Counted from the first letter of the stretch, positions 4,851-54,700 are shown. The stretch is 64,000 bases of DNA from Cyanophora paradoxa CCMP329 (GCA_004431415.1 QPMI01000582.1:62001-126000); one strand, 5' to 3'. A program made the numbers and translations. The notes: generated by a model from the sequence alone, not told the origin.

Positions 4851-5160
4851 TTCTCGGAGCTTGGCCGGCCGGTCCACTCGCGAATCGCGATCGGTGCATT
4901 GGCATAACCAATGGATTGCTCAATGGCGATGTTTCGGTTCTGCTCGATCTTTTTTTCATTCAAGATTTGACGACTCAGTGACAAGATCTTGAAGGCTTCT
5001 GTTAATCGCAAGATCTTCAAGGCTTCTGTTAATCACAACTAAATCCGTCATCGAATCGTCAATGGCGCGAGATCGGTGAGATCTTTTTTAATTCAAGATC
5101 TTGACAGATCTTGCCAATGTGTTCGCGAAATTGTTTTTTGTATTCAGGATCTTGGCAAAT

Positions 5161-5742
5161 CTGAGGAAGGGCGCCGGGCTGCTGAGACGGGATATAAGTA
5201 TAATTATATACTCGAAGATCGACCTGGGGCAGATCTAATTAATAATTATCTGGCAGTGCAGATCTCGAGGGCGCGCCGACAGACGTGCGCCGCGGTGCGC
5301 GTCCGTGAAGGATCGAATTTTCGGGGTCACCTGGATTGTTGCGCCCTGTCGCGTCGTCGGAGGTCTCGATGGAGAACTGAGGAAGGGCGCCGGGCTGCTG
5401 AGACGGGATATAACTATAATTATATACTCGAAGATCGACCTGGGGCAGATCTAATTAACAATTATCTGGCAGTGCAGATGTCGAGGGCGCGCCGAAAGAC
5501 GTGCGCCGCGGTGCGCGTCCGTGAAGGATCGAATTTTCGGGGTCACCTGGATTCTTGCGCCCTGTCGCGTCGTCGGAGGTCTCGATCGAGAACTGAGGAA
5601 GGGCGCCGGGCTGCTGAGACGGGATATAACTATAATTATATACTCGAAGATCGATCTGGGGAAGATCTAATTAATAATTATCTGGCAGTGCAGATCTCGA
5701 GGGCGCGCGGAAAGACGTGCGCGTCCGTGAAGGATCGAATTT
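5161..5742. repeat. 216-bp tandem repeat x~2.7 (also ~16396-16977)
   Basis: CTGAGGAAGGGCGCCGGGCTGCTGAGACGGGATATA starts at 5161, 5377 and 5593. Confidence 0.92.
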
Positions 5743-5877
5743 TGAGGAGTTTATTTTTATAATATTGTTGGGAAGGAGGCCCGGGAGGGGCGAGGTTCTC
5801 GCGGCCAGGCGCATGCACAGAGAATCGCTTAAACAGAATCTCGAATGCATATAGCATCGATGTGCGGGACTGCGGAC

Positions 5878-6670
5878 GCGAGGGCGCGCGGAAAGGTCTG
5901 CAGGTCTGTAGAGGATAGAAGTTTCGGGGTCGGCTGGGTCCTCGCGGCCCGGCGCAGCTATTAAGCGTGCGGAAGGCTTCTTCTACATCTCAAATGCTTA
6001 TGCTATTGTTCCGCGCATGCGCCGCGGCGTGGGCGCGCGGAAAGATGTCCGGGCCTGTGCAGGATCGAATGTTTGCGTCGGCTGGGATCTCGTGCTCTTG
6101 CGCGTCTTCAAAGCTTGCGCAAGGCTTTAATAAATTCTGAAATGAATATTGTAGCGATGCGCACGCGTGAGGATGCGAGGGCGCGCGGAAAGATGTTCAG
6201 GTCTGTAGAGGATCGAATTTTCGGGGTGGGCTGGGTCCTCGCGGCCCGGCGCAGCTATAAAGCGTGCGGAAGGCTTCTTCTACATCTCAAATGCTTATGC
6301 TATTGTTCCGCGCATGCGCCGCGGCGTGGGCGCGTGGAAAGATGTCCGGGCCTGTGCAGGATCGAGACTTTGCTATCGGCTGGATTCTCGTGCTCTTCCG
6401 CGTCTTCAAAGCTTGTTGAAGGCTTTAAAAAAAATCTCAAATGAATATAGTAGGGATGCGCACTCGTGAGGATGCGAGGGCGCGCGGAAAGATGTCCAGG
6501 TCCGTCAAGGATCGAATTTTCGGGGTCGGCTGGGTCCTCGCGGCCCGGCGCATCTGCAATGCGTGCGGAAGGCTTCTTCTACATCTCAAATGCTTATGCT
6601 ATTGTTCCGCGCATGCGCGGCGGCGTTGGCGCGCGGAAAGATGTCTGGGGCTGTGCAGGATCGAATTTTT
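5878..6670. repeat. ~298-bp tandem repeat x~2.7 (also ~17113-17905)
   Basis: AGGGCGCGCGGAAAG starts at 5881, 6178 and 6477; the block GGAAGGCTTCTTCTACATCTCAAATGCTTATGCTATTGTTCC is shared. Confidence 0.9.
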
Positions 6671-7119
6671 GATGTCCGGTACCTTCCTGCGCTGCTCCGG
6701 GTTCGAAAAGCGGATTTCGGGAGTGCGCAGGCCCTGCTATGTCCATGCGCGCTCGTACGCATCGTTTGTGCGCTTCGCGGGACCGGCCGGAACCGGCCGG
6801 ATCAAATTTTCGGGCGACTCTTCGCACTGGAGCGTCGAGGGCGCCCGAAATCGAGCCTGCGGCGATGCGCTCGCGTTTGCGCGTCATTCTGTATCGTTCT
6901 GGGGCGTCCCTGGCGCGATTTCGTCGCGGGACCGGGCGGGACCGGGTCCCACCTTCTGACTCGGACTGTGTTTGTCGGAGGTTAAGTACCGGAATTGATC
7001 CAGAGGGAAATTCGATGTTCGCGCGACGTCCACGGGGGAGCGGTCGTCTTAGGGGAGCCAGGACGCTAAAAATGGATCTAGAGGGGTCTGTGGGGGTTCG
7101 GGCAGCTGTGTAATGTCCA

Positions 7120-10100
7120 TCAATCGCGTCCGTGTCGAGGCAGAATTAATATCTCGCCAGGATTGCGGTTGCGGATCGGTCGCATGAAGCCGCGCTGGTA
7201 CGAACGTCTTGTCCGCTTGTCCGGAGGGATGCACGGTACGGTGCGGGCGTGAAACGACGAGTGCCAGATGGGGTAGTTGAGCATATGGAAAGCTGCCTCC
7301 GGCCTGCCGAGTTCGCGGTGGGAGAGCGACTTCCGAATCGCTTTCGCCATCGCGCTCCGTAGGGTGCCTCCCTTCTCGGCCGCCTTTGCGAGCGCAGCGT
7401 ATATGCTCTCCAATGCCTGCGGTTCGACCTGCGGGCGCACAATGAGTTTCAGTACGTTCTACGTCTGTCCAGGGACGCGTGAGCACGGCCGTACCTTCAG
7501 TGCGTACTTGAACATGTACGCTCCCATCGCTTCGAAGTCCGCGACGAGATCGAAGAAGAGGTTGGAGTGCGCAATGCGGGACAGCCACTCGTTGAACAGC
7601 GCCACAAACAAGTCTTCTACTGTGCGTCGCATCGGCACCAGTAGCCTGTCGCCCCGTTGCGCGTTCTTGAGTTCTGGCGTCGACCTGTGCGTTTGTATTC
7701 GTCAGGAATCGTTCCGGGGGCACGTCATCGCAGAACTTGAGCACGCACATGAGTCTCGCGTATCGGGACGCGCGCCCTGGCAGTCCGAAGCGGCACCACT
7801 TCCTCGCCCTCCACCAGGCGTTGTTCAGCTTCTTGACGAGGTCGGCAAGTTCCTGGGCGTCCTTGTCGGAAGCACCGTGGATGGGCTGGCATCCTTCGAG
7901 CAACGGGTTCGTGTACTCCTGAGTCGGCTTGAACTGCGCTGCAGCGGCGAAGAGCTCTTCGTGACGCTTGCGCGTGGAAGATGAATAGTGCTGTGCCTGC
8001 TTGGCCTTCGTCATGCGGCACGTGCCGCTGTGTCGGTGAATGTTGAACGTGAGGATGACCTTCCGGAGAAACGCGGTCGCCCAATCATGACGAAGGGCAT
8101 CGGGCACGTGAAGGTTGTCCTCGACGGCTGGGTCGTCGGGCTTCGGAGGTCGAGGATCTCCGCCTTGACGATGCTGTCAAAGAATTCGAGGTACTCTTTC
8201 ATGTGCTGCTTCTCGCACGTGTCGTACATAGGCATGCCTTCGCACCAGCCGATGAGGTGCCCATGCAACGTCCGCCGCTGCTGCTCGCCGTGACGGATGA
8301 AATGACCTGTCATCTTGTAACCGCCGAACATCGCCCTCGCGCCTTCGGAGTACATCAGCTTGATCAACGCGTTCCAGCGCCGCTGATAGTGACGGACAAC
8401 GATTCCGGACTCCGAGTTCAGGATCGTGTCCTTCTCGTTTGCGCTTAGCGCATCGATTGCGGCCTGGTTGTGGAACCTCTCGCGGTCGATGGCTCTGTAC
8501 AGACTCGCGTCACCGTGATCGTTGAAGCTCATAGTGTACCATATCTGCGGCGGCCGTACGTCTGTGCGGCAGCAATGAGCTGGCCGTGACCGGTCTCGAG
8601 ATGCTGGTGCGATCCCGGCACCTGGAGATGGGCGCGTTACGCAATAATGTGCAAATTGTTGTCAAGGGTGTGCTGCGGACTCACCGCATTCAGCGTCGCG
8701 CGGACGAGGTGGCGCTTAACAAAGTCTACGGTAACGCTGGGGTCATCGACGGCGGTGGTGAGGTGGTCCATGACGTGCGCGGCCGTCACCGGGTGACCGG
8801 CCGCCTCCAACTTGTCGAGCTCGAGACTCTGAATTGCACAGTTGCTCTTCTGGTAAGCCTTGAGGTTGAGATAATCCGTCGCCTGGACGAAGAAGAATCC
8901 GATGTCGGCGACAAGGGCGCGTGCCTTGTCGGACAGCAGGAACCACTTGTTGTACTTGCTGATCGACAGCGGTACTTTGCGTTGATCGAGAGGGTCTGCA
9001 GGGTCGCCTATCCGTCCGTGCCGGCCTGTGTTCAGAAAGGGTCAATGTCGGTCTGCACGAAATCACAAATCGACGGCGGTGCCGGTGCACTGTGCTCACC
9101 GTCTGGAAACGCAAATGGAAATGGGCTGTGCAGTACTCTGCACCCTTGCTGAAATTTAAGTGGACGCGATCGAGGATTGGCAACGTGCGAGTACGTTCGG
9201 CAACATCTTCGCCGAACGCCGTGGCAACGTCGATGAGCCTGTGGTGATACTCGGACTGCACGACTGCGGGCGTCGCCGGCTGTTGAGGCATGTCGAATCC
9301 GGTGGGGTCGCTGTACACTGCGGCCTCTGTATCGACGTCGTGCGCCGTAGCACGTGCAAGCTGCACGAACTCGTCCACGTCCTTGTTGTTGATCTGCGCG
9401 AGCTTGTCGAGGTCGACGAGATCGGAGGGGCGCGTCTGGGCGCGTCCTCGGCTTCGTCCTCGGATCCGGTGTCGCGTGTCGACCTTGCTGTTGACGCGTC
9501 ACGTGTCGGCCGAGCTTCAAGGACGACTCCATGAATTGCTTCAACACGGGATCTCCTACGTCGGTCAACAGGCGACGGGCTCCGGAACTGGCGATTTCGT
9601 ATCCAACGTCGTCGTGCACTTCGGGTTCTTCCGAAACTTCCGCCTCCTCGTCGCTGATTGCTGGCTCGGTTCCCGTCGCCGCGTGCGGTACCGCTGTCAG
9701 GTCCACCGACTCGCCGGTTCCGGGTACGTGGGGCTGGCGTCCGCGCTTGCGGGCGACTCGCGGCGGTGCGGGGGTGCGGTCGCGCAGCTCTTCCTCCGCA
9801 AGTTCTTGCTTCCACGTCGTCTCTTTGGCAGTGACCTCGTCCCAGTAGGCGTCGTCGAGCTTGTCGAATCCGCATTTCTGGTACCACTTGTTGCCGGCCG
9901 CGACGAGCAGCTTCATGACGCTTCTCACCTTGGAAGTGCTGAACTCCCAGTAGTTCGTGAACCTGCGGTCGTGCCCGGGCGCCGTCGGTTTCTCCATGTT
10001 CACGTACATCATCGCGTCTCGCGGCGCGAGGGCTTCATCGATTCGACGAGCTCGGCGGGCTGCGAGTAAACCATGGTGACCTTCGGGTGCGCGGCCTGCT

Positions 10101-10980
10101 GCCGACCGATGCGCGTGGTTGCGATGTTCACGAACGACACGGCCGGACTGCATACGACAGCCTCTGGAAACGTGAGGCCTGCTGCCTCCCTGGCGAGGTC
10201 TTCCGACGGCGGTGTCGGGTGGATGCCGTTCTGTGCGGGATGGTCAATGACCATACTGGAGACCGGTAGAGACACACTCGGACCTCTTTTGAAAGCCCGC
10301 AGATATCGACACCTTGCTCTGCGCGGTGTCTGTGGCACATTGCGCAGAGCAACGGTTTCCGCGGTTTTGACGTTCCGGTTTCCAGCTTGTGCATGTAATC
10401 CTCCGTCTCCTGAATGCGCCGTATCGCGGCGTCGTCGATCCCGTGGGGCTTCAATATGTTGAGGTGCGTCTCGGGGTGGAGATCGTCGATGTAGTCCCGG
10501 ACGCCGCAGCAATCACACGGCACCATCGGCTGGTACAGAGCTGCGGACAGCATTACTGGCGAAATGCACATAACCGAACTGAAATTCACATACTGTACAG
10601 CATGTCGATGATAGCGTCCTTGAGCGCCTCAAGAAACTGCGGAAATTTACTCCGCTTTTTTGCGATTGCGTCAATTACGTCGTGCAGTAGCTCATTCGGG
10701 TGCTCGTAGTCGCTGATCCACGTGTTTACGCATTTCAGTTTGAACGCGAGAGAGCGTTCATTTTTGGCCGAACGGATAGCTGCACGTCTGTCGCGACCCG
10801 CATCACTGTGTAATGGTTTGGTATTCTTCTCGTCCTGGTATCGCCGCGCACGACGATCATGTTCTTGTGACCGTTGGCCGTGTGTATGCTTTGCACGTGC
10901 CTCTGCATCTGCGTCTGCATGTCCTGTCTGTTCAAGTGGACGCCGAGATGCAGACGGTCTTGCAGGTAAATGTTCGCGTC
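7120..10980 (-). CDS. Helitron Rep protein (CxxC pairs, DUF6570-like N-terminal region, Helitron_like_N / HUH-Y2 Rep domain); spliced, 3'-truncated, no helicase; start approximate
   Basis: Motifs in order: CDCCG..LCAMCH; AQNGIHP..LTFPEAVV..KVRSVMKLL..NKWY; FPFAFPDG; motif 1 PQIWYTMSFND (~8520-8552); motif 2 HGEQQRRTLHGHLIGW (~8243-8293); HRHSGTC; CRFGLP; motif 3 AYMFKYALK (~7495-7521); RELGRPEAAFHMLNYPIWHSS. Apparent frameshifts coincide with short C-runs. Confidence 0.85.
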
Positions 10981-11022
10981 GTACAGCGGTGTGCTCGTAA
11001 CAATTACACGGATCAGTATCTG

Positions 11023-12442
11023 CTATAGGTCGCAGGTCCGTTTCTCCATGGAGAAATGTAGGTCGAGGAGGAATAAAAACCGGTATGGTGCCGAGCCATT
11101 CGTGATCGGCAGGAAGAGGACGTGCCGGACGTCCAGCAGGACACCTTGAATTGTGCCTGGAGCGAAGCGGGTACTATCTGTGAAATTCTCGTCGAGAGGA
11201 AGCGCTTCACGTCCAGATGCATGTACTATGCACATGGACAAGGTATGAAGTGTAGCACGCACAGTTCGACTGCCAATTGTGAATTGTGAACCGACATGTG
11301 GCCAGTTACGTTGGATAATAAGTGATGCACCGGGGCTGTGACAGCGGGCTGGCCAGGTGGATATTCTTTACGAGGTGCTAGGAGTTCGGACGGTAATTGC
11401 CACGGAATAGACGATTGCAATGCTGAAGTTGTTGTCACCGTCGGTTTACACATGTGCACATGTACGTCGACGACTGTGAACGTCGTTATTGACGTTCGTT
11501 GAAGGTGCCAGACTGCCGCAAAAGGCGCCCCATGGACGGCTGCAAGCGCCATTACAGTTGCACCTCCTGCTAGTCCGGTTACCGTTGCACAGTGCGAGTA
11601 ACGCAAATGAGACGGTATGTTGAGGAGTTCGAGAGTCTGCGTTATCGTGCCGGCTGATATTACAGATGGAAGCACGTGACGGAGTTTCTGCAGCGAAATC
11701 GCTGTTGACGCGCCTGATTTTCTGTGAGTGATGCGTATGCAATGACAATTATAGGCAGGCAAGACGAAACTGACCTTCATGTGATGGTGACGCTTTAAGT
11801 ATACGATGAAAGCAGAGCACGTCGGACGCAATGTAATAACCGTTTTTCAGCGGTGCTAGCACGAGAGACTGCGTGAATAATCGTGCCGTTGCAGCTGATT
11901 GTCCCATCCAGCCGGTAACGGTTACATTGATGCTGTGCGCGCGTCCCTCATGTGCTGTCACCGCTGCGACACGCGCCCACGCACGATCCAAGCGCAATCG
12001 AGCGATACGTTTCTCAATTGCCTGCAAGACATGATGTTTGACTTCCGAAACGAATGAGTTCTATCTGAAAAGGATGACCTGAATTCCGATAGCGTATGCG
12101 CTCCGATGGATCGTTCATCATTGATCCACATGTGGACACTGGCGTCGCGGTAACACCTATATAATTGATGCGGTTGAGAGAGCAGAAGTTGATAGTACTG
12201 CTTCACAAATGCTGATGCTGTGCTATCAATTGATTTATGCGTCGCGAGTGCAGATCTGGACAAATGAGAAATGGGCTTGATTCTGCGCCCTCATGGGCTG
12301 TTGGAATTTCGAGTGCAAGCTCGACATTGAGTTCAGGTCCGCAGAGATCCACTGCAGTGGAGTTCCATTTCCATTCGCGGCACACAACATTGCCGACTAT
12401 TCCCGGGACGTGGTATCGGCAGGCTGCGTGGAAGGTGAGCAC
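11023..12442 (-). CDS. Helitron cargo gene with NTF2-like domain (copy 2)
   Basis: Near-identical to copy 1 but with -1 homopolymer indels near 11332, 12108 and 12273. The copy-1 reading frame projects onto a stop at 11023, just upstream of the Rep gene. Confidence 0.7.
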
Positions 12443-15400
12443 ATGTCTATGAATCTATGATGACCTGCGTTACGCTTACAGGTTCACGCAAAGCTCGTGA
12501 CTGTGCCGCCTGGCTTACATGTCGTACTGGCATTGCCTCTGAGTCACTGGCATGTTCGCGATTGACTGTTTCGAGAATTATCTCAATGACGGGGTGCAAA
12601 TTTGAAAAATATTTTTGTACCTGCTCTCTTTGCTCTGCTGCGCTGCACACGGGCAGCATTTGATGTAACAGATGTAGGGATGCGGGCAGCAACGTTGACT
12701 TTGATGGTTGTTCGCGTTCTAAAACCGAGTTAAGAGTATAGAGTTATGCAATTAACTTACATAATATGTATACCCTTTTCTGTTGCAGGAACCCTCGGAA
12801 TTGTCATGTCTTCACGCGTAGATCGATTTTCAATGTCTACATTTTCTCGATCAATGTGAACACGCGGTGGTGATAGAGTGCGTGCACGACGTCTGCGTGC
12901 CATCAAATCTGCGTCATGTTCCGATGGTTCTTCTGCATTGGGCTCCGGTCTGCGATCATCTCTGACTGGCTCCGTGATGGCCATGGGATGGGCACGGTTC
13001 GACACATGCGCTTGTAAATTTTCAGTAATTTGTGCTCGTGGTTATTTAGAAGGAATTTCAATGCGCACTTGCAGAGGTGGGAATTATGACCATATAGACG
13101 AAGAGACAGAGCAACAATATTCCGACTGCAGCCGGTAATGTCCAGTGAGGTGCTGGGTCTGGATATGCTCAACATACGGCGCATCCGCAGGGAGGGCAAA
13201 TGCAAGATTTTTCTGATTCCCTGACAGCGTCAATGTAATCCATATGCCAGTAATGGATGGAGAAAATAACAGAGCTGCTGTACACCGCACTGGAAATTGT
13301 GACAACGACGCAAGATTCGTTATTTACAATCGCGTTGTTAGACTGCAGATATATGCGTACATATTGACATCCGCGATCGCATTTGTTTAATCCATGTGCA
13401 GTATCGTTCATGACGACGGGCGTTTATAATTACGGCACGCAATTCTGGGAGTAAATACGTCTCAGACAGCGTTTATGAATGTCCGTATTACCGCTTTTAT
13501 ATTCTTACCTCGATAAAGACGGTTTCTTTTTGCGGACGTGGACGAATACATGTCGAGTAAAAGTGTCAATGCAAGTCCCAAATCTGCGTCTGTCGCCACG
13601 GAAATAGTGCCGGTGTCTGATAAGACAAACGAATCGGTTTTCTTGAGATGCCATTGGCAGTATCGCTTGAACAGCATGATACCAATTCCTGCACTGACGT
13701 CTGTAACGTAATCATGTTCATAAATGCGAGATTAAATGCCTGATATAATTGTTGTGCAGGTGATAATGAACGGAGAGTTGCATATAATCGAGACGTGAAT
13801 TATGGTTGTTATTGCGGTTGCATATACTGGAATTCCCGATAGTTGTCCGTTTCCATCATCGTGCGGGAATTTGTGGAAGTGAAAATGAGAAGCGATGTAT
13901 TCTTCGCAGTTCTCTTTTTTTTTCAAAGCTATGCCAACTGCCTCTGTTGCAAATATGTTATTGTATTCGAGTTCAAGACTGCCAATATCAGTCGCTAAAT
14001 CCGCGTACCAAGAACTGCAAATATCAGAATAACCAGTTCGGTACCGTACAGAAATTGTAGAGATGGAGTGCCCATTAAGTTCATGTCTGTGATCGACTGG
14101 GTTCAAAAACCGTATTGCGAGTAATGTATGCGGGTTTATTATAATTATACGGCACTTTCTACCATGCCGTGCAGCATCAATACCCGCGAGGCTCACCTTT
14201 TAGCACGTTCAATCCACTCGCGGATGACGACAGGGAGAGAGGAATTGCTGATGCGGCGCATGAAGTCTCCGATGCGCGTGGTCCGAGCCGCACGACAGCC
14301 GCTGCAGCTGCGGCAGTTGCATTTAACGCCCAGCATGTGATGCATTTCGAGCCAGGTTGATCGCCTGCTCGCATGCGGCGCGGCGTGGGCGCGCGGAAAG
14401 ATGTCCGGGTCGGTACAGGAGCGGGTTTATTATAATTATACGGCACTTTCTACCATGCCGTGCAGCATCAATACCCGCGAGGCTGACCTTTTAGCACGTT
14501 CGATCGACTCGCGGATGACGACAGGGAGAGAGGAATTGCTGATGCGGCGCATGAAGTCTCCGATGGGCCTCGTCGGAGCCCCACGACAGCCGCTGCGGCA
14601 GTTGGATTTAACGCCCAGCATGTGACGCATTTCGAGCCAGGTTTATCGCCTGCTGCAGTCGCGGACGAGGACACGCAGGGGAGACGGGCGGTGCGGTGCT
14701 TGTATCTGCTGTCGGTGGTGTTCGGCGAGGTGGCAGGCACGGCCCGCATCTTAAATAGCAGCAATCCTCACCTTCTAGCAGACTCCATGCACGGGCAGAG
14801 CGCGACAGTGAGCATGAGACGGGGCAGTGGTGCACGTCTGTTGCGGCGCTGGCATGTCGTTCCGGCGTACTTGCTGCGGCGCCACCTGCAGCCACGGATG
14901 ACGAGAGGCAGCACGGCATGTCGGTGGCGGCGCTTGCATCTGTTCACAGCGTATACGTAGTTGGGCGACGCGGAGCCTCGGAGACAGCGGGCGTGCAGGG
15001 CCAATAGCAGGGCGGGGATGCTAACCTTCTAGCAGACTCCACGCAATACCGGACGACAATGATATCGCCCGGAACTGCTGTACAATCACGAAGAAGATGC
15101 ATTTCAAGATGTTTCGCTGGCGTGCACGTTTACGACGCCAGCGGACGCGCGCAATCGGCGCATAGAGTCCCGGCTTCTTGATTATACGCATAGGGTTGTG
15201 TCCACGAAAAGTTCCACACGTTCGCGTACTGTAATTGCAATTCTGCACACGGTATGGATGTGAACGCGTACATATATATGTATATATGTACGTATACGTA
15301 CGGATGTCAACGCTTACGTATATGTACGTATACGTATTCGCGAATACGCGCTGTAGATCTAGCGCTAGCTAGCCGGACTTGACAGTGCCGGGTTCAGATT

Positions 15401-18369
15401 CGCGCTAGACAGCGTTATAGTCACAGTGTGCGCTCTATAACTTTTGACCGCGGTCTAGCGCTACCTACTAGGCTAGCCGGACTTGACAGTACCAGGTTCA
15501 GATTCGCGCTAGAGAGCGCTATAGTACAGCGCCAGACTGCGCATGCGCCGCTAGTACGGATTGCACGCGTACACTACGCCGGACTGTATATATGTACTGA
15601 CTCGAACTGGCACTGTCACAGTAGGCGCTCTATAACTACGTATAATGGCTGCCCGGCCGGCTCGCTATAGCTATAGCTCCCTTGCAGGACTACAGCATTG
15701 CGGTATAGCTACTATTAGCTAGCCTCTGAGCACTGCCTAGCACAGCGCGTACACTACGCCGGACTGTATATACGTACTGACTCGAACTGGCAATGTCACA
15801 GCTAGTAAGCGCTCTATAACTACGTATACTGGCTGGCCGGCCGGCTCGCTATAGCTATTGCCGCAGTGCTCTCTTGCAGAACTACAGCATTGGAGATTGC
15901 GGTATAGCTATACCTAGCCTCTGAGCACTGGCAGAGGGGCACAGGCGGCACAGCTAGCTATAGTAGTAGACTGATAGTTGGCCCGGTTGGCAGTGCGGCG
16001 GCCTGGTTCACGTTTGTAGCTGCTTCGCACTAGTATACGTACTGTCTCATCAGTCTGTCTGAGCGCTACTACTAGGCTAGGCTATTCTCGGAGCTTGGCC
16101 GGCCGGTCCACTCGCGAATCGCGATCGGTGCATTGGCATAACCAATGGATTGCTCAATGGCGATGTTTCGGTTCTGCTCGATCTTTTTTTCATTCAAGAT
16201 TTGACGACTCAGTGACAAGATCTTGAAGGCTTCTGTTAATCGCAAGATCTTCAAGGCTTCTGTTAATCACAACTAAATCCGTCATCGAATCGTCAATGGC
16301 GCGAGATCGGTGAGATCTTTTTTTAATTCAAGATCTTGACAGATCTTGCCAATGTGTTCGCGAAATTGTTTTTTGTATTCAGGATCTTGGCAAATCTGAG
16401 GAAGGGCGCCGGGCTGCTGAGACGGGATATAAGTATAATTATATACTCGAAGATCGACCTGGGGCAGATCTAATTAATAATTATCTGGCAGTGCAGATCT
16501 CGAGGGCGCGCCGACAGACGTGCGCCGCGGTGCGCGTCCGTGAAGGATCGAATTTTCGGGGTCACCTGGATTGTTGCGCCCTGTCGCGTCGTCGGAGGTC
16601 TCGATCGAGAACTGAGGAAGGGCGCCGGGCTGCTGAGACGGGATATAACTATAATTATATACTCGAAGATCGACCTGGGGCAGATCTAATTAACAATTAT
16701 CTGGCAGTGCAGATGTCGAGGGCGCGCCGAAAGACGTGCGCCGCGGTGCGCGTCCGTGAAGGATCGAATTTTCGGGGTCACCTGGATTCTTGCGCCCTGT
16801 CGCGTCGTCGGAGGTCTCGATCGAGAACTGAGGAAGGGCGCCGGGCTGCTGAGACGGGATATAACTATAATTATATACTCGAAGATCGATCTGGGGAAGA
16901 TCTAATTAATAATTATCTGGCAGTGCAGATCTCGAGGGCGCGCGGAAAGACGTGCGCGTCCGTGAAGGATCGAATTTTGAGGAGTTTATTTTTATAATAT
17001 TGTTGGGAAGGAGGCCCGGGAGGGGCGAGGTTCTCGCGGCCAGGCGCATGCACAGAGAATCGCTTAAACAGAATCTCGAATGCATATAGCATCGATGTGC
17101 GGGACTGCGGACGCGAGGGCGCGCGGAAAGGTCTGCAGGTCTGTAGAGGATAGAAGTTTCGGGGTCGGCTGGGTCCTCGCGGCCCGGCGCAGCTATTAAG
17201 CGTGCGGAAGGCTTCTTCTACATCTCAAATGCTTATGCTATTGTTCCGCGCATGCGCCGCGGCGTGGGCGCGCGGAAAGATGTCCGGGCCTGTGCAGGAT
17301 CGAATGTTTGCGTCGGCTGGGATCTCGTGCTCTTGCGCGTCTTCAAAGCTTGCGCAAGGCTTTAATAAATTCTGAAATGAATATTGTAGCGATGCGCACG
17401 CGTGAGGATGCGAGGGCGCGCGGAAAGATGTTCAGGTCTGTAGAGGATCGAATTTTCGGGGTGGGCTGGGTCCTCGCGGCCCGGCGCAGCTATAAAGCGT
17501 GCGGAAGGCTTCTTCTACATCTCAAATGCTTATGCTATTGTTCCGCGCATGCGCCGCGGCGTGGGCGCGTGGAAAGATGTCCGGGCCTGTGCAGGATCGA
17601 GACTTTGCTATCGGCTGGATTCTCGTGCTCTTCCGCGTCTTCAAAGCTTGTTGAAGGCTTTAAAAAAAATCTCAAATGAATATAGTAGGGATGCGCACTC
17701 GTGAGGATGCGAGGGCGCGCGGAAAGATGTCCAGGTCCGTCAAGGATCGAATTTTCGGGGTCGGCTGGGTCCTCGCGGCCCGGCGCATCTGCAATGCGTG
17801 CGGAAGGCTTCTTCTACATCTCAAATGCTTATGCTATTGTTCCGCGCATGCGCGGCGGCGTTGGCGCGCGGAAAGATGTCTGGGGCTGTGCAGGATCGAA
17901 TTTTTGATGTCCGGTACCTTCCTGCGCTGCTCCGGGTTCGAAAAGCGGATTTCGGGAGTGCGCAGGCCCTGCTATGTCCATGCGCGCTCGTACGCATCGT
18001 TTGTGCGCTTCGCGGGACCGGCCGGAACCGGCCGGATCAAATTTTCGGGCGACTCTTCGCACTGGAGCGTCGAGGGCGCCCGAAATCGAGCCTGCGGCGA
18101 TGCGCTCGCGTTTGCGCGTCATTCTGTATCGTTCTGGGGCGTCCCTGGCGCGATTTCGTCGCGGGACCGGGCGGGACCGGGTCCCACCTTCTGACTCGGA
18201 CTGTGTTTGTCGGAGGTTAAGTACCGGAATTGATCCAGAGGGAAATTCGATGTTCGCGCGACGTCCACGGGGGAGCGGTCGTCTTAGGGGAGCCAGGACG
18301 CTAAAAATGGATCTAGAGGGGTCTGTGGGGGTTCGGGCAGCTGTGTAATGTCCATCAATCGCGTCCGTG

Positions 18370-47835: not shown

Positions 47836-49208
47836 TCACTTCGCAAGAGTACTCGGGGGCGGGTCGTCGGGCGCGTCGGGGGCTTCCAAGGCGAGGCGCT
47901 CGCCCCCGCCGGGGGCCCGCCCGGGGCGCTTGAAGGCGAGCCCGCAGCACTGCAGGCCGAAGAGGGGCCACGCCGAGGCCCGCCGCGCCCGCTCCTCCAG
48001 CGTCCGCGCAGCCTCCTCCTCCCCCCCGCCCTCCCCAAAGCCGTACACGAAGTCGCCGAAGATGGGGTACCCCTCGTGCGAGAGCTGCGCCCGGATCTGG
48101 TGCCTGCGGCGTTGCCCGTCAGGCGGCGGAGGGACGGCGCAGGGCGGGGCGGGGCGCGCGTTCGGCCCGTGCCGAGCTCGATCTCGATTTCGAAGAGGGG
48201 CCGCTCGAGCTCGCCGCCGCCGCGGTTGGCCCAGGATGCGGCGGCCTCGGCGGCGGGGCGGCCCCAGCGGCGGGCGACCTCGCCGGGGAGCACGCGGCGG
48301 GAGGCGAGGACGGTCAGGTGGCAGGGGAGCCAGCCCGAGCGGGGCGCCCGCGCCACCCGCTTCGGCGCCCGCGGGCACTCCTCCATCCAGTGCTCCATCG
48401 GCCCCAGGGGGGGACCCTCCGCCCCCGCACTCGCCCCCGCCCCGCCCTCCCCGCCGGCGCGATCAGCCGGGCCCGGGGAGCCCGAGGCCTCCTCGTCCGC
48501 CGGCGTCTCCGGCGCCTCGGCGGCCTCCCCGGGCTCCGGCCCGCACCCTCTGCTGCGGGCGGGTCCGCCTGCCTCTCGCCGCGCACCGCCAGGACCCTGT
48601 ACCGCTTCCGCACCTGCCGCCGGGCCGGCGGTCGGCGCGGGGCGGGGCGGGGCGGGGCGGGGCGGGGCGGGGCGGGGCGGGGGCGCCTTGTGCTTGCGGA
48701 GGAGGAGGTTGAAGCGGGAGAGGAAGTCGCGGGTGCGGGCGAGGACGAGCAGGCCCCGCGTCGGCTGGTCCAGCCGGCTCGTCACGAAGACCGCCTCGCC
48801 GAGCACGGCCGCGACCTGCTCGCACACGTTCTCCCGCGCGTTGTCCGAGTTCGCGTGGCACGGCACGCCCGGCGGCTTGTCCACGACCACGAAGCCCTCC
48901 TCCGCGTGCACGATCGCCGCCCGCCAGTCCACGCGCCCCACGGGGAAGCGCTGCGACGATGCCGATCAGCCGCGGCGCGGACCGCGCTCGCTCGCCCGCG
49001 CTCGCGTGCTGCCGCTCGCCTTCGGGTTGAGGTGCGCTCGCACGTACACCTTCGCCTCGACCTCTCGCTCGGCGTCCTGAGAAGCGAGCCGCTCCTTCCC
49101 CCGCAGCCAGACCGCTCCGAAGTCGATCAGCCACCGCATGCGCTCCTCGGAGACGCCGACCGCATCCGCGATCACCGCCGCCGCGGGCCCCGCGCGGAGA
49201 GTCTCCAC
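47836..49208 (-). CDS. RluA-family pseudouridine synthase (start uncertain)
   Basis: RAHLNPK|RFP, VVVDKPPGVP, catalytic SRLDQPTRGLLVLA, IELGTGRT|HQIRAQLSHEGYPIFGDFVYG. Confidence 0.9.
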
Positions 49209-49528
49209 ATGCCTGATGTCCGCCGCGTTCTCTGATTCCTCCAGCGTTCGGCGCCGCGCTTAGCTAAGAGAACGTTAACACTGGGCCTCCAGCTCGTTGG
49301 CTAGCGCCGTCTATAGCTAGCTGCCTAGAAGCTGGCGATTGTATACCTTGCCGACGGGATTCGAACTGCGGTCAGCCTCGCCCAAGAAGTCGCCGCCTCG
49401 CCCGAACTGCTGTCAGCCTCGCTCAAGAGCCGCCAGACTCGCCAGCTAACAGGCTAAACGCACACGTAGTGACTGGGCTACGCAGCCGCAGCGCAGCCGC
49501 AGCGCAGCCGAATCCACAGCGAGTCGAG

Positions 49529-51693
49529 ATGGCGGCGCGCTCGATCTCGCTGCTCGATTCGTGTAGAGGGTTGCTTTTGGGTTGCATGTGCGGCGACATT
49601 TTAGGCGCTGCGGTCGAGATGCTGCCGGCCGAACAGATCGCGTCCCGCTTCGGGAGGGTCAAGACCTTCCTGACGAATCCGGAGAGGCCGTTCGGTGCGC
49701 CGGGCTCCGCTTTTGCCGCATAAGCTGCGCTCGTCGCACCGAGCTAGCTGCCGCGGCCGTAGCCCGCGCCCCGTCTGCCGTGCTTCCCGCCAGCTGCAGC
49801 CGCGGCGCCGGCTGAGCGCGGCGGCCGCAGGGTGCTACACAGACGACACGCAGATGACACTCGCGCTGGCCTGGAGGTGCGGATACGCCCCCACGGGCCG
49901 CCGCCGGGCGGCCGCTGACGAGGGGCGGCGGGGGCGGGGGCAGCCTGGTGCAGTGCGGGGGCCTGGTGGACCCGGAGCACTGCGCGGCGGCCTACACGGA
50001 GTTCTACCAGGAGTGGCGGGGGTACGGCAAGGGCGCCAAGAAGGTCATGGAGGCTCTCAAGGCGCGCTCCGTGCCCCGCCCCCCACCCGCCGCCGGGCTC
50101 TGCTGAGGGCCGGCGCAGGCGGGGGCGAGCTACAAAGATACGGGGATTATGTTCATCCCGGAGGGCTCCCTCGCCAACGGCGGAGCCATGCGGTACCCCC
50201 CCCACTCCCACCCCCCCTCTCGCCGCTCCCGCTGAAAATTGCGCGGCAGGATCGGCCCCGTGGGCCTCGCCTTCCGTAACGCGCCCCACGCCGTCCTCTA
50301 TCGCGCCGTCCACGTGCGCAGCCCCCTTCGAGTGCGGGGCACGTGGGCCGACGGGGGTACCGGGCAGGACGCGGTGATGTGCACGCACCGGCACGCGGAG
50401 GGGATCGACGGGGCGTTCGTTCAGGCGGCGGCCGTCGCGAGCCTCGCGCGACTCGCTCTCGCCGACGCCCCGGCCCCGGAGGGGGCGCGGCCCCGCGCCG
50501 GCGTTCCCCGCGACTGGGACGTCGAGCTCCGCGTCCGCTGCGAGACCAGGTGGGGTCGATCGACCCTGTACCCCCCGGGCCCCGGCTCCGTCCCGCCCTG
50601 AGACGGGTACAGCTTCGGGGAGACGGTGTGCTTGGCGGGGGACTGGTGCGGCTGGGGTACCGAGACGGCCCTTGAGCTGCAAACGTCCGACGAAGACTAC
50701 CCCCTCTGGCGAACGCGCACCCCCGTCCCCATCGTCCCCGGCCGGAGCATCGAGTGCGGCCTCCCTGCGCCCGGCCCCGGGCGCCGGCGCCCGCCGCTCA
50801 CGGGGGTACAGGTACAAGTACATCGTGAGGGGGGCGGCGGGGGGCGCCGCGCGGTGGGAGGCCTTCGAGGGGAACCGGCGGTACGCCCCCCCGGGGCGGC
50901 CACCGAAGCCGCGGGGCGGGGAGGACGGCGCCGACGAGGGGCCGATCGCCGTCGACGACGGCTGGTTCGGCGCCCGCGAGGAGGGCGCGTGCCCCCCTCC
51001 CTCCCCCGCCCCCCGTCCCGAGCAGCGCGCAGGGGGCACGGCCAAGGGGGACGTGGAGCCGTTCCGGCTGCTGGAGTCGCTGGGGGCGCTGGCGCGCACG
51101 GAGGCGTGCCGCGGGAAGCTCGCCGCTGCCCGCGCCGGCCTCGAGCGGCTCTACGGGCCCCCGGGGGGGCCCCCCCGCGCCGCCCCGCGCCTCTCCACCT
51201 CCGACCGCGCCGCCATCGAGCTCCAGGCCCGCTTTGCCTGCCCCCTGCCCAACACCCCCTCCCCCCTAAGCGGGGCGGGGCAGGTGGCGAAGGAGCTGAT
51301 GGGGGAGTGCGGGCTGCGGGCGGCGGAGGGCGTGGCGGTGGCCCTCTGGGCGCTCTGCCTGCACTGGCGGCACCCCGTCGACTGCCTCGCCGCCGCCGTC
51401 GGCTACGGCGGCGACTGCGACACCACCGCCGCCATGGCCGGCCCGCCCCGCCCCCGCCCCCTCCCCACTCGGCCCCAGCTGAGCCCGGCGCAGGGGCCCT
51501 GCTGGGGACGGTGCACGGGGCGGGGTGGGTGCCGGGGGAGTGGCGGGAGCAGGCGGAGAACACGCGGTGGGGCCTGGACGACGTCGAGGGCCTCGCCCAG
51601 GAGCTCGCAGCCGCCCTCCCCTCCGGCGACCCCCGCCGCTCCCTCTCCTTCCGGCTGCCCCCGGGGCCCGCCCCCGAGGCCGAGATCTCCTAG
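49529..51693 (+). CDS. ADP-ribosylglycohydrolase (ARH3/DraG family) with internal CBM20 starch-binding domain
   Basis: GCMCGDILGAAVE, YTDDTQMT, RGYG, NGGAMR|IGPVG, THRH, GGDCDTTAAMA|GALLG. Insert ~50515-50970: VELRVRCETSFGETVCLAG..WG..AL.L..YPLW..IEYKYIV..RWE..GNR. Confidence 0.88.
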
Positions 51694-51757
51694 CCCCGCT
51701 CCCCTCTCGGCCGCAGCGCTAGTCCGAGTGCCAGTCCCCAAGTGTGCCACAGACGCG

Positions 51758-54700
51758 TCAGGAGAGGGGGAAGAAGGCGGTGGCAAGGACGAAGGGGACG
51801 GGGGCGACGGGGGGCGCCTCGGCGGCGGGGCCGAGCTCGGGGGCGCGCCCCGAGACGGAGGCGGAGAGGGGCCCGAGGTGCGGGGCGGCGAGGTTGCCGC
51901 TGCGGGGGTCCACCTCGTAGGGCACGACGCGGAGGCGCAGGGCGCACTCGCGGGTGGCGAAGGCGGTGAGGGCGAGCTCGTTGGCGGCCCCGGGCGCCGC
52001 GAGGAGGCCCGGGGGCAGGAAGAAGGCCCGCTGCGGGCCCATGGAGCCGACGTAGCGGGCGAGCCAGGTGCCGTTGACGGCGGCGTTGACGACGGCGGGG
52101 GGCGCGCCGCCGGCGGCGTCGGTGACGAGGAGGGCGACGGGGAGGCCGGCCGGGGGCGAGGCGAAGGAGGAGGTCGCCCGCACGACGCCCGCCGCCGGCC
52201 GCAGGCGCAGCTCCCCCTCCGGCTCCGGCTCCGGCGCCTCGAACCAGGCCGCGTCGAAGCCGTCCGTGTTGTACGGCTCGTCGGGGGCCCCCGGGGCGGC
52301 CGGGCGCGCCGTGACGTCCACCCCCGCGATGCTCCAGCGGGCCTCCCGCACGGGGCTCGTGCGCGGGAGCACGTTCCGGGGGTCCCAGCTGCGGCGGGGG
52401 GCCTCTTCAGGGGGGGCGGGGGGCGGGGCGGGGCCGGGGGCACTTGTGGAAGAGGAAGGTGGCGGAGAGGAGGCCCCGCGGGTTGCGCACGTCGTTCAGG
52501 ATCACAGGCTGCCGGCTCATCCCCCTGGCCCCCGCGCTTGAGGCGGAGAGAGGCAAGGCGGGGGAGGAAGGGGCGGGGCGCGGACACGCTGCCGACGACG
52601 ATGAGGAGGGTCTGCGTGGGCCGCTCGGGGGCGAGGTGCGGGGCGAGGTCGTACACGTGCGACCCGAGCCACGAGGGGTCTGCCCCGCCCCGCCCGTCAG
52701 GCGCGGGCGGGGGCGAGGGGGGCCGCTGGAGGGGGGCGCGCCGGGCCCGTTCTTGGCGCCCGGGTGGAAGAAGGAGGTGGAGTAGGTCTCGTGGGAGCCG
52801 ACGAAGGCCCCGTTCATGTACACCGCGCAGTAGTGCCGCACGTTGAGCCGCAGCCGCAGGCCGGCGGAGGCGCCCGGCTGGAACTCGCAGCGGTAGAGCA
52901 CGTGCCCCGAGGTGAAGCCGTGTTCCAGCGGGTCCTTGCCCGAGCGCAGGTGGATGGGGCGCCACGCGACGCGGCCCCAGTCGATCGCCCCCGCCGCGTA
53001 CCGCCCCGGCTGCGGGGGCGCCGGCGGGGCCGCCACCTCCGCCCCCAGCTCGGCGACGCTCTCGGGGCCGGAAGGGGCGGGGGCGAAGGGGGGCGGGGCG
53101 GGGCCGGCGGGGCGGAGGAGGTGGACGCGCTGGCGGCCCCAGGTGGAGACGGAGAGCCCGAGGGGCGCCTCGGGCGCCGGGCGCTCGAAGCGGGCGTGGT
53201 AGGCGCCCCACGCGACCCCCGCGATCGCCCCCTGCGCGCACGCGGGGAGGTCGGGGGCGGGGGCGGGGAGAGGGGGCGGGGGGCGCGGGGGGGCGGACGG
53301 CCTCGTCGAAGTGGGCGGAGAGGGTGAGGGCGTCCTCCTCCCCGAGGCAGAGGACCATCATCGAGGGCGCGGCGGGGCCCTTGCGCACCCGGGCGGCCCC
53401 CGGGGCGGCGAACGTGAGCACCGAGCAGCCGCCGCGGCGCTCGAGGGCGGCCCCCGCGCAGGCCCCCGGTTCGAGCTCGGCCTCCCCGACGAGCGCGAGG
53501 CCGCCAGGAGCGTGCTCGACGACCCAGAGCTCGCCGGCACCGAAGCGGCCGCGAAGGAGGACGGGGAGGGTGGCGAGGGCGAGGGTGAGGTGCGTCGCCT
53601 CGGAGCGGATGTTGGCGGGGATGAGGAGGGAGCGAAGGAAGGGGAGGCGGAGGGGCAGGGCGGCCCCCGGCCAGCCGGCCGCCGCCACCTCGAGCTGCAG
53701 CGTCGAGCGCGAGCCGGAGAGGTTGCGGGCGAGCGTGAAGGCGGCCCCCGAGCGCTCGTCGGCCCGCGCGGGGCCGAGCGCGGCGGCGGCCTCGGGGTCG
53801 GTGCCGGGGACGGGGGCGACGGCGCCGGGGGCGGGGAGGCCGCGCTCGAGGGCCTCGGCCTCGAGGAGGAGCGGGGCGAAGGAGCGGGCAAAGAGGGCGG
53901 CGGTGCGGAGCTTCCGGTAGCGGCGCGTCACCAGCCCGTACTCCCGCACGCACGCGCTGTAGTCGTACGACGAGAAGGCGTCCGGGTCCCCCAGGCTCCC
54001 CGCGTTCGTCCCTGGCGCCCCAGCCGGGGAGGGAGGCGAGGGGTCAGAGGCGGGGGCGGGGGCGGGGAGGCGAGGGGCGCGCACCGCCGTAGAACATGTA
54101 GACGGAGAGGATGGAGAAGCCCTGCGCGAAGAGGCTGTGGAAGAGCAGCCGCTGGTACTCGTCTGCGCGGGAGCGGCTGAGAGGGGGGCGGGGGCGGAGG
54201 ACGGGGCCAGGGGCGGGCACCGGTGAACCAGTCGTAGAAGAAGTCCCAGCCGCCGGCGCAGGTCCAGGGGCAGAACCAGCCGCCCTGGAGCTCGGGGATG
54301 AAGAGGGGCCCCGAGGCGCAGCCGGCCCCGAAGGCCCGGATGTCCCGCTCGAGCGTGTCGACCGAGGGCGCGAAGCCGCGGAGCATCTTGTCGCAGCCGG
54401 CCCAGGAGCGGGGCGTGCCGGGGGCCGGGTGCAGGGGCGGCTCCAGCGCGAAGAGGTAGAGGTCGAAGCCGTACAGGTCCACCCCGTTCTCCGGCCCCGT
54501 CCCCGGGTTCCACGAGCCCCACGGCTGCACGAGGGAAGAAGGGGCGGGACTCAGGCTCCGAGCGAGGGGTGTGGGAGACGAGGGAGGGGGTACCTTGGCG
54601 TCGTTTGAGAAGACGGGCACCGTGCAGCCGGCGGCGCGGGCGTACCTGCAAATCCATGAGCGGGGGAAAAGTGGGGTAGAGGGGGGTACGCAGCGCACGC

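What the first reader, a model, noticed from the sequence alone, without database searches (positions are those of the whole stretch)
49529..51693. ADP-ribosylglycohydrolase with a CBM20 starch-binding module inserted inside the catalytic domain
Seen: all ARH/DraG metal-binding motifs (GD, TDDT, NGGAMR, GDxDT) are intact, and between THRH..AAAVASL and the C-terminal helices sits a full CBM20-like module (~50515-50970) carrying two introns and the typical W, YKY, WE and NR residues. No targeting peptide is evident. Known: CBM20 directs enzymes such as laforin, PWD and DPE2 to starch or glycogen. Inference: reversible ADP-ribosylation, or hydrolysis of an ADP-sugar-like linkage, at cytosolic starch granules. 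I know of no described protein with this architecture.
Basis: partly seen in the sequence, partly recalled or inferred. Interest (0 to 1): 0.8.

Follow-up and report, generated by a model that had tools for sequence, protein, structure and literature searches.

The report
ADP-ribose hydrolase with internal starch-binding domain
The glaucophyte alga Cyanophora paradoxa has one gene for an apparently intact ARH3-like enzyme that removes ADP-ribose, with a complete starch-binding CBM20 module inserted in a surface loop; no other sequence searched has this combination, and it hints at ADP-ribose signalling on cytosolic starch granules, which nobody has tested.

Summary
Window 49529-51693 (+) holds one 10-exon gene of Cyanophora paradoxa (EukProt model P0001, 100% identical).

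- **Domains:** Pfam finds ADP_ribosyl_GH (E 3.5e-41, two stretches) and CBM_20 (E 1.7e-10, 41 bits) in P0001.
- **Clean insertion:** A profile of 69 homologues stops at position 186 (50478) and resumes at position 186 (51044). No catalytic-fold position is lost.
- **One reading frame:** Both junctions lie inside single exons (E6, E8). The CBM20 cannot be a separate gene or be skipped cleanly.
- **Residues kept:** All near-invariant family residues are present, and so are the CBM20 sugar-binding residues W212, Y227, K247, W260 and N266.
- **Fold:** The insert folds (pLDDT 78) as a beta-sandwich that matches solved CBM20s. The ARH core folds at pLDDT above 90.
- **Location:** There is no room for a targeting peptide, and glaucophyte starch is cytosolic.
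- **Uniqueness:** An exhaustive phmmer search (top 150 of 2982 hits), word searches, genome and metagenome scans, the ESM Atlas and the literature show no second ARH+CBM20.

Function is inferred: an Mg-dependent, ARH3-like de-ADP-ribosylation enzyme tethered to starch. The scan lists this same stretch once more under s1-621108, not on other DNA. Its unchecked notes also report NADAR-CBM20 fusions in this genome. I class it as a new variant of a known kind.

The parts
49529..49694 (+). Exon 1: start codon and ARH N-terminus (GD...E motif). Only 9 residues precede the conserved domain.
   Evidence: Pfam PF03747 profile 1-32. Homologue profile 1-56, E 8.7e-17. Aligns to P0002 residues 20-65.
49831..49876 (+). 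Exon 2: YTDDT metal-binding motif.
   Evidence: Homologue profile 45-70, E 1.4e-7. Read directly from the sequence.
49944..50070 (+). Exon 3: ARH helices with the RGYG motif. P0001 uses a GC donor 9 nt upstream instead.
   Evidence: Homologue profile 71-110, E 5.2e-14.
50119..50192 (+). Exon 4: GS.ANGGAMR motif.
   Evidence: Homologue profile 109-137, E 5.5e-9.
50250..50313 (+). Exon 5: ARH helix.
   Evidence: Homologue profile 134-155, E 4.3e-5.
50368..50549 (+). Exon 6: ARH helix (THRH...AAAVASL), a Pro/Ala linker and the first CBM20 strand, all in one uninterrupted exon. This is the N-terminal junction.
   Evidence: Homologue profile 155-186 ends at 50478. The Pfam CBM_20 match starts at P0001 residue 189, inside this exon. 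No stop codon in frame.
50512..50971 (+). CBM20 starch-binding module (P0001 residues 186-298), with two introns at 50550-50612 and 50754-50811.
   Evidence: Pfam PF00686 E 1.7e-10, 41 bits. AF2 model pLDDT 78. Foldseek top hits are all solved CBM20s. All 10 Atlas rows shown are CBM20-type folds, 9 of them clusters carrying PF00686.
50613..50753 (+). Exon 7: central CBM20 strands, with W212, Y227 and W230.
   Evidence: Exon alone hits Pfam CBM_20 profile 15-57, E 0.012. Alignment to CGTase domain E and to the GH77 CBM20s.
50812..51226 (+). Exon 8: second half of CBM20 (YKY, WE, NR), a Pro-rich linker and the next ARH helices in one exon. This is the C-terminal junction.
   Evidence: Homologue profile resumes at position 186 at 51044. 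The helices at P0001 328-359 have pLDDT above 90. No stop codon in frame.
51284..51440 (+). Exon 9: ARH helices and the GGDCDT metal-binding motif. It follows a probable in-frame 57-nt GC-AG intron (51227-51283) that P0001 retains.
   Evidence: Pfam PF03747 profile 225-271, E 3.5e-7. Homologue profile up to 277. The intron call rests on donor and branch-point resemblance to intron 9 and on a 41-residue excess over the profile; it is not proven.
51494..51693 (+). Exon 10: conserved ARH C-terminus and the TAG stop. It follows the GC-AG intron 51441-51493. This exon is missing from the public model P0001.
   Evidence: Homologue profile 276-317, E 5e-10.

Best explanation
This is one nuclear gene of Cyanophora paradoxa. 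It encodes a cytosolic protein of about 523 residues.

Shown:
- The protein is an ARH3-like member of the ADP-ribosylglycohydrolase family, and its sequence looks catalytically competent.
- A surface loop after the long helix that follows the TH.H motif carries a 153-residue insert: a Pro/Ala/Gly linker, a complete CBM20 beta-sandwich, and a second Pro-rich linker.
- The domain identities, the single-gene architecture, the conserved residues and the absence of a presequence are all tested here.

Inferred:
- The CBM20 holds the enzyme on the surface of the cytosolic starch granules, or on soluble alpha-glucan.
- There the di-metal centre cleaves the ribose C1'' bond of O-linked ADP-ribose. Possible substrates are mono-ADP-ribosylated granule-associated proteins, and perhaps poly(ADP-ribose) or O-acetyl-ADP-ribose.
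- The protein would thus be the 'eraser' of an ADP-ribosylation cycle that acts on starch metabolism.
For: - **Identity and domains:** P0001 is EP00741 Cyanophora paradoxa and 100% identical to the window. Pfam finds PF03747 at E 3.5e-41 and PF00686 at E 1.7e-10 in the same protein.
- **Clean insertion:** The homologue profile is interrupted at one point only: positions 20-186 match residues 1-169 and positions 186-277 match residues 323-455. On the genome this is 50478 and 51044.
- **One gene:** Both junctions lie inside exons. My spliced ORF is 523 aa with a single terminal stop, and GC3 is 0.82-1.00 in every exon, CBM exons included.
- **Catalytic residues:** All family residues conserved at 90% or more are present: D4, E11, Y39-T40-D41-D42, R77-G78-Y79, S108, N111, H144, H146 and G444-G445-D446-x-D448-T449.
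- **Closest structures:** The best solved relatives by sequence are ARH3 (E 7e-12) and then DraG. The ARH core model has pLDDT above 90 and matches ARH3 structures.
- **CBM20 fold and residues:** The model has pLDDT 78 and pTM 0.70. It matches glucoamylase, beta-amylase, STBD1, GPCPD1, CGTase and laforin CBM20s. W212, Y227, W230, K247, W260 and N266 align with the CGTase domain E residues and with GH77 CBM20s.
- **Cytosolic location:** The ARH domain starts at residue 1-10. Glaucophyte starch is exclusively cytosolic (PMC6086201).
- **Permissive loop:** Other homologues carry 27-77-residue inserts without a Pfam domain at the same loop.
Against:
- No orthologue exists in any database searched, so conservation and selection cannot be assessed. 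The gene could be a young, species-specific chimera.
- No starch-binding, activity or localisation data exist.
- A short MSA guided the CBM20 model, and its confidence is moderate.
- Substrate class (Ser-, Arg- or ribose-linked, or a small molecule) cannot be read from sequence. The family includes non-enzymatic members.
- The position of the insert relative to the active site was inferred from the helix length.
Confidence: 0.55

Rival explanations
1. The architecture is the same, but the CBM20 is a sensor and not an anchor. Because it is wired into the catalytic fold rather than attached at an end, glucan binding would switch hydrolase activity allosterically, coupling ADP-ribose signalling to carbohydrate status. 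This is loosely like the glycogen-binding CBM48 of the AMPK beta subunit.
For: The module sits inside the fold, between two helices of the catalytic domain. The exon-7 fragment gives a weak AMPK1_CBM hit, E 0.12.
Against: The linkers are 16 and 24 residues long, rich in Pro, Ala and Gly, and modelled as disordered. That argues for a loosely tethered module. The same loop tolerates unrelated inserts in homologues.
Confidence: 0.15
2. The enzyme does not act on proteins. It hydrolyses a small ADP-ribose derivative (O-acetyl-ADP-ribose, ADP-ribose-1''-phosphate or alpha-NAD) near the granule, or an ADP-ribose unit O-linked directly to the glucan.
For: The closest solved relatives, ARH3, have been crystallised with alpha-1''-O-methyl-ADP-ribose, alpha-NAD+ and an ADP-ribose dimer (entry titles). 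Cleavage of a ribose-O-sugar bond is therefore within the family's chemistry. A CBM brings the enzyme to the polymer itself.
Against: No ADP-ribosylated glucan is known, and no paper links ADP-ribosylation with starch granules in this sense. Nothing in the sequence separates this reading from protein substrates.
Confidence: 0.15
3. The gene is a non-functional or unexpressed lineage-specific chimera, or an assembly artefact, and the protein is not made as modelled.
For: The protein has no other member in its 90% cluster and no orthologue. No transcript evidence was obtained. The public model has errors.
Against: Ten exons give one open frame with consensus splice sites. GC3 is 0.89-0.96 in the CBM exons, as in the rest of the gene. 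Every conserved catalytic and sugar-binding residue is kept. Both junctions are in frame within exons. A decaying or chimeric locus would not be expected to keep all of this.
Confidence: 0.1

Closest known systems
ARH3 / ADPRS (ADP-ribosylserine and poly(ADP-ribose) hydrolase, PF03747)
   Same: It is the best solved relative by sequence (6g1p, E 7e-12) and matches by fold. The all-alpha fold is shared, as are the GD...E, TDDT, GNGGAMR-type and GGDxDT motifs. The nearest metagenomic homologues are named ARH3 by IMG.
   Different: ARH3 is about 350-370 aa and has only a short loop where this protein carries 153 residues including a CBM20. Orthology to ARH3 is not established. Identity to solved ARH3 chains is low (14-17% over the full-length Foldseek alignments, 24-27% over the N-terminal core alignments).
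DraG (ADP-ribosyl-[dinitrogen reductase] hydrolase, TIGR02662)
   Same: Same fold and the same metal-binding motifs. It is matched weakly (E 6.5e-12; PDB 2woe, E 1.9e-6).
   Different: The score of 45 bits is far below the equivalog cut-off of 337, so this is not DraG. DraG has no carbohydrate-binding module.
Laforin, GPCPD1, STBD1, PWD/GWD3 and DPE2: non-amylolytic proteins targeted to glycogen or starch by CBM20
   Same: The logic is the same: a CBM20 brings a non-glycosidase activity to an alpha-glucan. The insert's model matches the laforin, GPCPD1 and STBD1 CBM20 structures. The nearest sequences are CBM20s of GH77 (DPE2-type) and GT20 proteins.
   Different: In the GH77 and GT20 relatives read here the CBM20 is N-terminal, and from family knowledge it is terminal in the named proteins too. 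Here it is inserted inside the partner's catalytic fold. The partner is an ADP-ribosyl hydrolase, and none of the 10 Atlas rows shown (one per family set among the 30 nearest models) pairs CBM20 with that family.
ARH-like subunit of the Chlamydomonas Ycf2/Orf2971-FtsHi chloroplast import motor (8xks_Q, 8xqw_G)
   Same: It is the top Foldseek match of the full-length model (E 2e-8, TM 0.63 by target). It is also an algal ARH-fold protein of 386-394 aa.
   Different: Identity is only 17%, and it was not found by sequence. It is a plastid complex subunit without a CBM20. Whether it is catalytic is unknown to me.

Membership tests
ADP-ribosylglycohydrolase family (Pfam PF03747) | Profile match above the curated cut-off over the whole domain | tested here: met
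   P0001 scores 142 bits against a cut-off of 26.2, E 3.5e-41, in two stretches. Exon 10, which P0001 lacks, matches the family C-terminus.
ADP-ribosylglycohydrolase family (Pfam PF03747) | Di-metal site residues (T-D-D-T and G-G-D-x-D-T) and the N-terminal GD...E glutamate | tested here: met
   T40, D41, D42; G444-G445-D446-C447-D448-T449; D4 and E11. All are at columns conserved at 90% or more in 70 sequences. They align to ARH3.
ADP-ribosylglycohydrolase family (Pfam PF03747) | All-alpha ARH fold | tested here: met
   The AF2 core has pLDDT above 90. Foldseek hits ARH3, MJ1187, DraG and TTHA ARH-related structures.
ADP-ribosylglycohydrolase family (Pfam PF03747) | Mg/Mn-dependent hydrolysis of an ADP-ribosyl linkage | not testable with these tools
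   This needs an enzyme assay.
ARH3 subfamily (ADPRS orthologues) | Orthology to ARH3, closer to it than to ARH1 or DraG | tested here: inconclusive
   ARH3 is the best PDB match (E 7e-12, against DraG at 2e-6). The nearest homologues are named ARH3 by IMG. No tree with reference ARH1, ARH2 and ARH3 was built.
DraG (TIGR02662 equivalog) | Score above the equivalog cut-off | tested here: not met
   45.2 bits against a cut-off of 337.
CBM20 (Pfam PF00686) | Profile match above the curated cut-off | tested here: met
   41 bits against 23.3, E 1.7e-10. Residues 189-270 cover profile positions 4-86 of 97.
CBM20 (Pfam PF00686) | Beta-sandwich fold of starch-binding domains | tested here: met
   The model has pLDDT 78 and pTM 0.70. 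All 50 listed Foldseek PDB hits are CBM20-bearing proteins, TM by query 0.51-0.66. Atlas TM is 0.65-0.74, and 9 of the 10 rows are clusters carrying PF00686.
CBM20 (Pfam PF00686) | Aromatic and polar residues of binding site 1 (two Trp, Lys, Asn) and site 2 (Tyr) | tested here: met
   W212, K247, W260, N266 and Y227 align with the corresponding residues of CGTase domain E and of GH77 CBM20s. Their roles are taken from established CGTase and glucoamylase work, not tested here.
CBM20 (Pfam PF00686) | Binding of starch or cyclodextrin | not testable with these tools
   This needs a pull-down, ITC or SPR.

The most novel reading that the evidence does not exclude
Cyanophora runs an ADP-ribosylation cycle on its cytosolic starch granules, and this CBM20-bearing ARH is one of several granule-anchored 'erasers'. 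Unchecked scan notes report CBM20-NADAR fusions in the same genome. The target could be granule-bound enzymes or even the glucan itself, as O-linked ADP-ribose on glucose. That would be a new layer of control of storage-polysaccharide metabolism.
Probability: 0.12. Interest if true: 0.85.

Novelty: new variant of a known kind. Interest (0 to 1): 0.55.

Why it matters
CBM20 is the module that brings laforin, the glucan dikinases and DPE2 to glycogen or starch. ADP-ribosylation has never been linked to storage-polysaccharide granules.

An intact ADP-ribosyl hydrolase carrying its own starch anchor predicts that ADP-ribosylated substrates exist at the granule surface in a glaucophyte. This lineage is used to reconstruct the ancestral cytosolic starch pathway of Archaeplastida. 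The prediction is directly testable by a starch pull-down, hydrolase assays and macrodomain enrichment from purified granules.

It is also a clean natural case of a whole domain inserted into a loop of the ARH fold that tolerates inserts, which is useful for engineering.

The limits are that it is known from one species and that neither expression nor function has been tested.

Tried and rejected
- **Contig look-up:** The look-up of encoding contigs for P0001 found nothing on record.
- **Protein Atlas by features:** no usable hit.
- **Single exons in Pfam:** exons 3, 4, 5, 8 and 10 gave no ARH or CBM20 hit (four none at all; exon 3 only a chance 4HB_MCP_1 hit, E 0.24), because they are too short. 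BLASTP of exon 10 against P0002 gave nothing. The profile search solved this.
- **Full-length AF2:** it left the insert unfolded because the MSA had no CBM20 sequences. A second job with a CBM20 alignment fixed that.
- **hmmalign in global mode:** it placed the insert after profile position 225. I rejected this in favour of the local alignments, which the confident helices at residues 328-359 support.
- **Joined spliced model:** It was assembled only inside a script to check length, frame and GC3, and was not printed. Full-length work used the public model P0001.
- **Separate or nested gene for the CBM exons:** rejected, because both junctions are inside exons.
- **DraG membership:** rejected.
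- **rDNA as the explanation of the low-GC 11.2-kb repeat:** rejected, with no Rfam hit.
- **Limits of the uniqueness claim:** only the best 150 of 2982 phmmer hits could be inspected. The word searches need shared 5-mers and see only candidates in the 280-890 aa or 398-1267 aa length window.

Full report
**Organism and locus.** The stretch lies in a region of 72-82% G+C. A word search with an open frame of the window returned one protein, P0001 (509 aa, 100% identical), with precomputed Pfam PF03747 and PF00686. Its source entry is EukProt EP00741_Cyanophora_paradoxa_P020289, tig00021244_g19583.t1. The window is therefore nuclear DNA of the glaucophyte Cyanophora paradoxa.

**Gene model.** I read ten exons from the sequence and three-frame translation:

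| Exon | Window coordinates |
|---|---|
| E1 | 49529-49694 |
| E2 | 49831-49876 |
| E3 | 49944-50070 |
| E4 | 50119-50192 |
| E5 | 50250-50313 |
| E6 | 50368-50549 |
| E7 | 50613-50753 |
| E8 | 50812-51226 |
| E9 | 51284-51440 |
| E10 | 51494-51693 |

- Introns are 48-136 nt. Seven are GT-AG and two are GC-AG with the same GCCCGC donor.
- Joined inside a script only, the exons give 1572 nt: 523 codons and one terminal stop. GC3 is 0.82-1.00 in every exon, and 0.93, 0.89 and 0.96 in the three exons that carry the CBM20.
- Exons were searched by reference, and full-length analyses used P0001.

**Independent check of the model.** I built a profile from 69 homologues without P0001 and searched the three forward frames of 49300-51800.

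| Window stretch | Profile positions |
|---|---|
| 49529-49696 | 1-56 |
| 49803-49874 | 45-70 |
| 49942-50064 | 71-110 |
| 50116-50202 | 109-137 |
| 50248-50313 | 134-155 |
| 50365-50478 | 155-186 |
| 50479-51043 | no match |
| 51044-51442 | 186-277 |
| 51490-51615 | 276-317 |

E-values run from 1e-7 to 5e-21. Three things follow:
- The true start is the ATG at 49529, not P0001's internal Met (one search agrees).
- Exon 10 is real, and P0001's C-terminus, which reads into intron 9, is wrong.
- The ARH fold is interrupted at a single profile position without losing any position. On P0001 the insert is residues 170-322.

**Is it one gene?** The N-terminal junction (ARH helix, linker, first CBM20 strand) lies wholly in exon 6. 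The C-terminal junction (last CBM20 strands, linker, next ARH helices) lies wholly in exon 8. Both exons are free of stops. The CBM20 cannot be a nested gene, and exon skipping cannot remove it cleanly.

**The catalytic part.**
- Pfam ADP_ribosyl_GH scores E 3.5e-41.
- In the 70-sequence alignment, every invariant or at least 90% conserved column has the family residue in P0001: D4, E11, Y39-T40-D41-D42, R77-G78-Y79, G107-S108, N111-G112, M115-R116, H144, H146 and G444-G445-D446-x-D448-T449.
- The best solved relatives by sequence are ARH3 of Latimeria, mouse and human (E 7e-12 to 6e-8), and then DraG.
- The DraG equivalog model scores far below its cut-off.
- The AF2 model has pLDDT above 90 over the ARH core.
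- Foldseek matches ARH3 structures, and slightly better an ARH-fold subunit of the Chlamydomonas Ycf2/Orf2971-FtsHi complex.
- The sequence therefore looks like an active ARH3-like hydrolase. Activity and substrate remain inference.

**The insert.**
- Pfam CBM_20 scores E 1.7e-10 and 41 bits; residues 189-270 cover profile positions 4-86 of 97.
- No close relative was available for an alignment. A pattern scan of bacterial and archaeal genomes then gave a Bacteroidales GH77 protein with two N-terminal CBM20s (L001, 36% identity). A word search with it gave five related proteins.
- With this 11-row alignment the insert folds as a beta-sandwich, pLDDT 78 and pTM 0.70.
- Its Foldseek matches are the starch-binding domains of glucoamylase, beta-amylase, CGTase, STBD1, GPCPD1 and laforin.
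- The ESM Atlas search shows 10 rows, 9 of them clusters carrying PF00686.
- W212, Y227, W230, K247, W260 and N266 align with the Trp, Tyr, Lys and Asn of CGTase domain E. They are conserved in the GH77 CBM20s. From the established CGTase and glucoamylase literature these residues form maltose-binding sites 1 and 2. That assignment is knowledge, not a test made here.
- The flanking linkers (about 16 and 24 residues, rich in Pro, Ala and Gly) are modelled as disordered.

**Location.** The first in-frame ATG after a stop is 49529, and profile position 1 aligns to it. A diverging gene begins about 320 bp upstream, so there is no room for a transit peptide. Starch is exclusively cytosolic in glaucophytes (PMC6086201). 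A cytosolic protein with a CBM20 would therefore meet starch.

**Uniqueness.**
- The exhaustive phmmer search against 1.84 billion representatives gave 2982 hits. Of the best 150, only P0001 itself matches the CBM part.
- The hits with unusually long gaps carry no CBM20.
- Several homologues do have domain-less inserts at the same loop (after profile position 185) and at a second loop (after position 225). These loops tolerate insertions.
- Word searches with the junction region and with the CBM region found only P0001.
- A metagenome scan found only CBM20-GT20 (trehalose-phosphate-synthase-like) genes of eukaryotic microbes, at 34-39% identity.
- Atlas architectures with similar CBM20s include LPMO, amylase, glucoamylase, GH77, GT20, laccase and RNase E/G, but no ARH.
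- No paper combines ARH and CBM20 or a starch-binding domain.
- Limits: only the top 150 hits were visible, and the word searches depend on shared 5-mers and on a length window.

**Mechanism proposed.** A Mg-dependent ARH3-like hydrolase is tethered by an internal CBM20 to cytosolic starch or alpha-glucan. It removes O-linked ADP-ribose from granule-associated substrates.

| Status | Items |
|---|---|
| Shown | Architecture, residues, folds, absence of a presequence |
| Inferred | Starch binding, activity, substrate, biological role |

Rivals:
- The CBM20 is a glucan-sensing regulator (0.15).
- The substrate is not a protein, possibly ADP-ribose on the glucan itself (0.15).
- The gene is an unexpressed or non-functional chimera (0.10).

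**Context from the scan (unchecked AI notes).** The same genome is said to hold CBM20-NADAR fusions (s1-509721, s1-525432), a CBM20 formin (s1-626781) and a CBM20 pseudokinase (s1-515536). I could not test these. If they are true, CBM20 is a general granule address label in this alga, and two unrelated families of ADP-ribose-removing enzymes carry it. That would strengthen the starch and ADP-ribose link. The scan also lists this same stretch under s1-621108.

**Verdict.** It is a new variant of known kinds: two known domains in an arrangement seen nowhere else. Interest is moderate to high, held back by single-species occurrence and the lack of expression or functional data.

Noticed in passing
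window 93-17904: A near-identical tandem duplication with a period of about 11,235 bp (for example 93-392 = 11332-11631 and 5084-5383 = 16319-16618, each 100%). It contains satellite arrays of 216 bp and of 149/299 bp (5161-6669 and 16396-17904). G+C is about 45-60%, against 65-82% for the rest of the window. There is no Rfam hit, so it is not rDNA, and no Pfam domain in its five longest ORFs. It may relate to the satellite-carrying element noted 21 kb beyond the window (s1-621040).
   Followed up: partly
window 49529-51693 (public model P0001): The EukProt gene model is wrong in three places. It starts at an internal Met, 19 codons downstream of the ATG at 49529. It keeps the probable 57-nt GC-AG intron 51227-51283. 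It reads through the GC-AG intron 51441-51493 and then splices past the conserved C-terminal helices.
   Followed up: yes
window 51227-51283 and 51441-51493: Two of the nine introns of this gene use GC-AG, both with the identical donor GCCCGC. The gene predictor evidently missed them, so GC donors may cause systematic model errors in this genome.
   Followed up: partly
model of P0001 against PDB 8xks_Q and 8xqw_G: The best Foldseek match of the ARH core is not ARH3. It is an ARH-fold subunit of the Chlamydomonas Ycf2/Orf2971-FtsHi chloroplast import motor (E 2e-8, 17% identity). ARH-fold proteins thus have structural roles in algae.
   Followed up: no
L003:454-972 and L004:417-1382: The nearest CBM20 relatives in metagenomes (34-39% identity, sharing the RWEAFEGN motif) are N-terminal CBM20s of eukaryotic proteins. 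In L004 a GT20 trehalose-phosphate-synthase domain follows the CBM20.
   Followed up: partly
P0032, P0069, P0070, P0078, P0130: ARH homologues from other sources carry inserts of 22-99 residues, with no Pfam domain, after profile positions 185 and 225. These are the same two loops that are expanded in the Cyanophora protein.
   Followed up: partly
window 51761-52372 (-): The converging downstream gene has a weak match to the beta-galactosidase second all-beta domain (PF13364, E 0.0015, below the cut-off). The diverging upstream ORF at 48969-49208 (-) has no Pfam hit.
   Followed up: no
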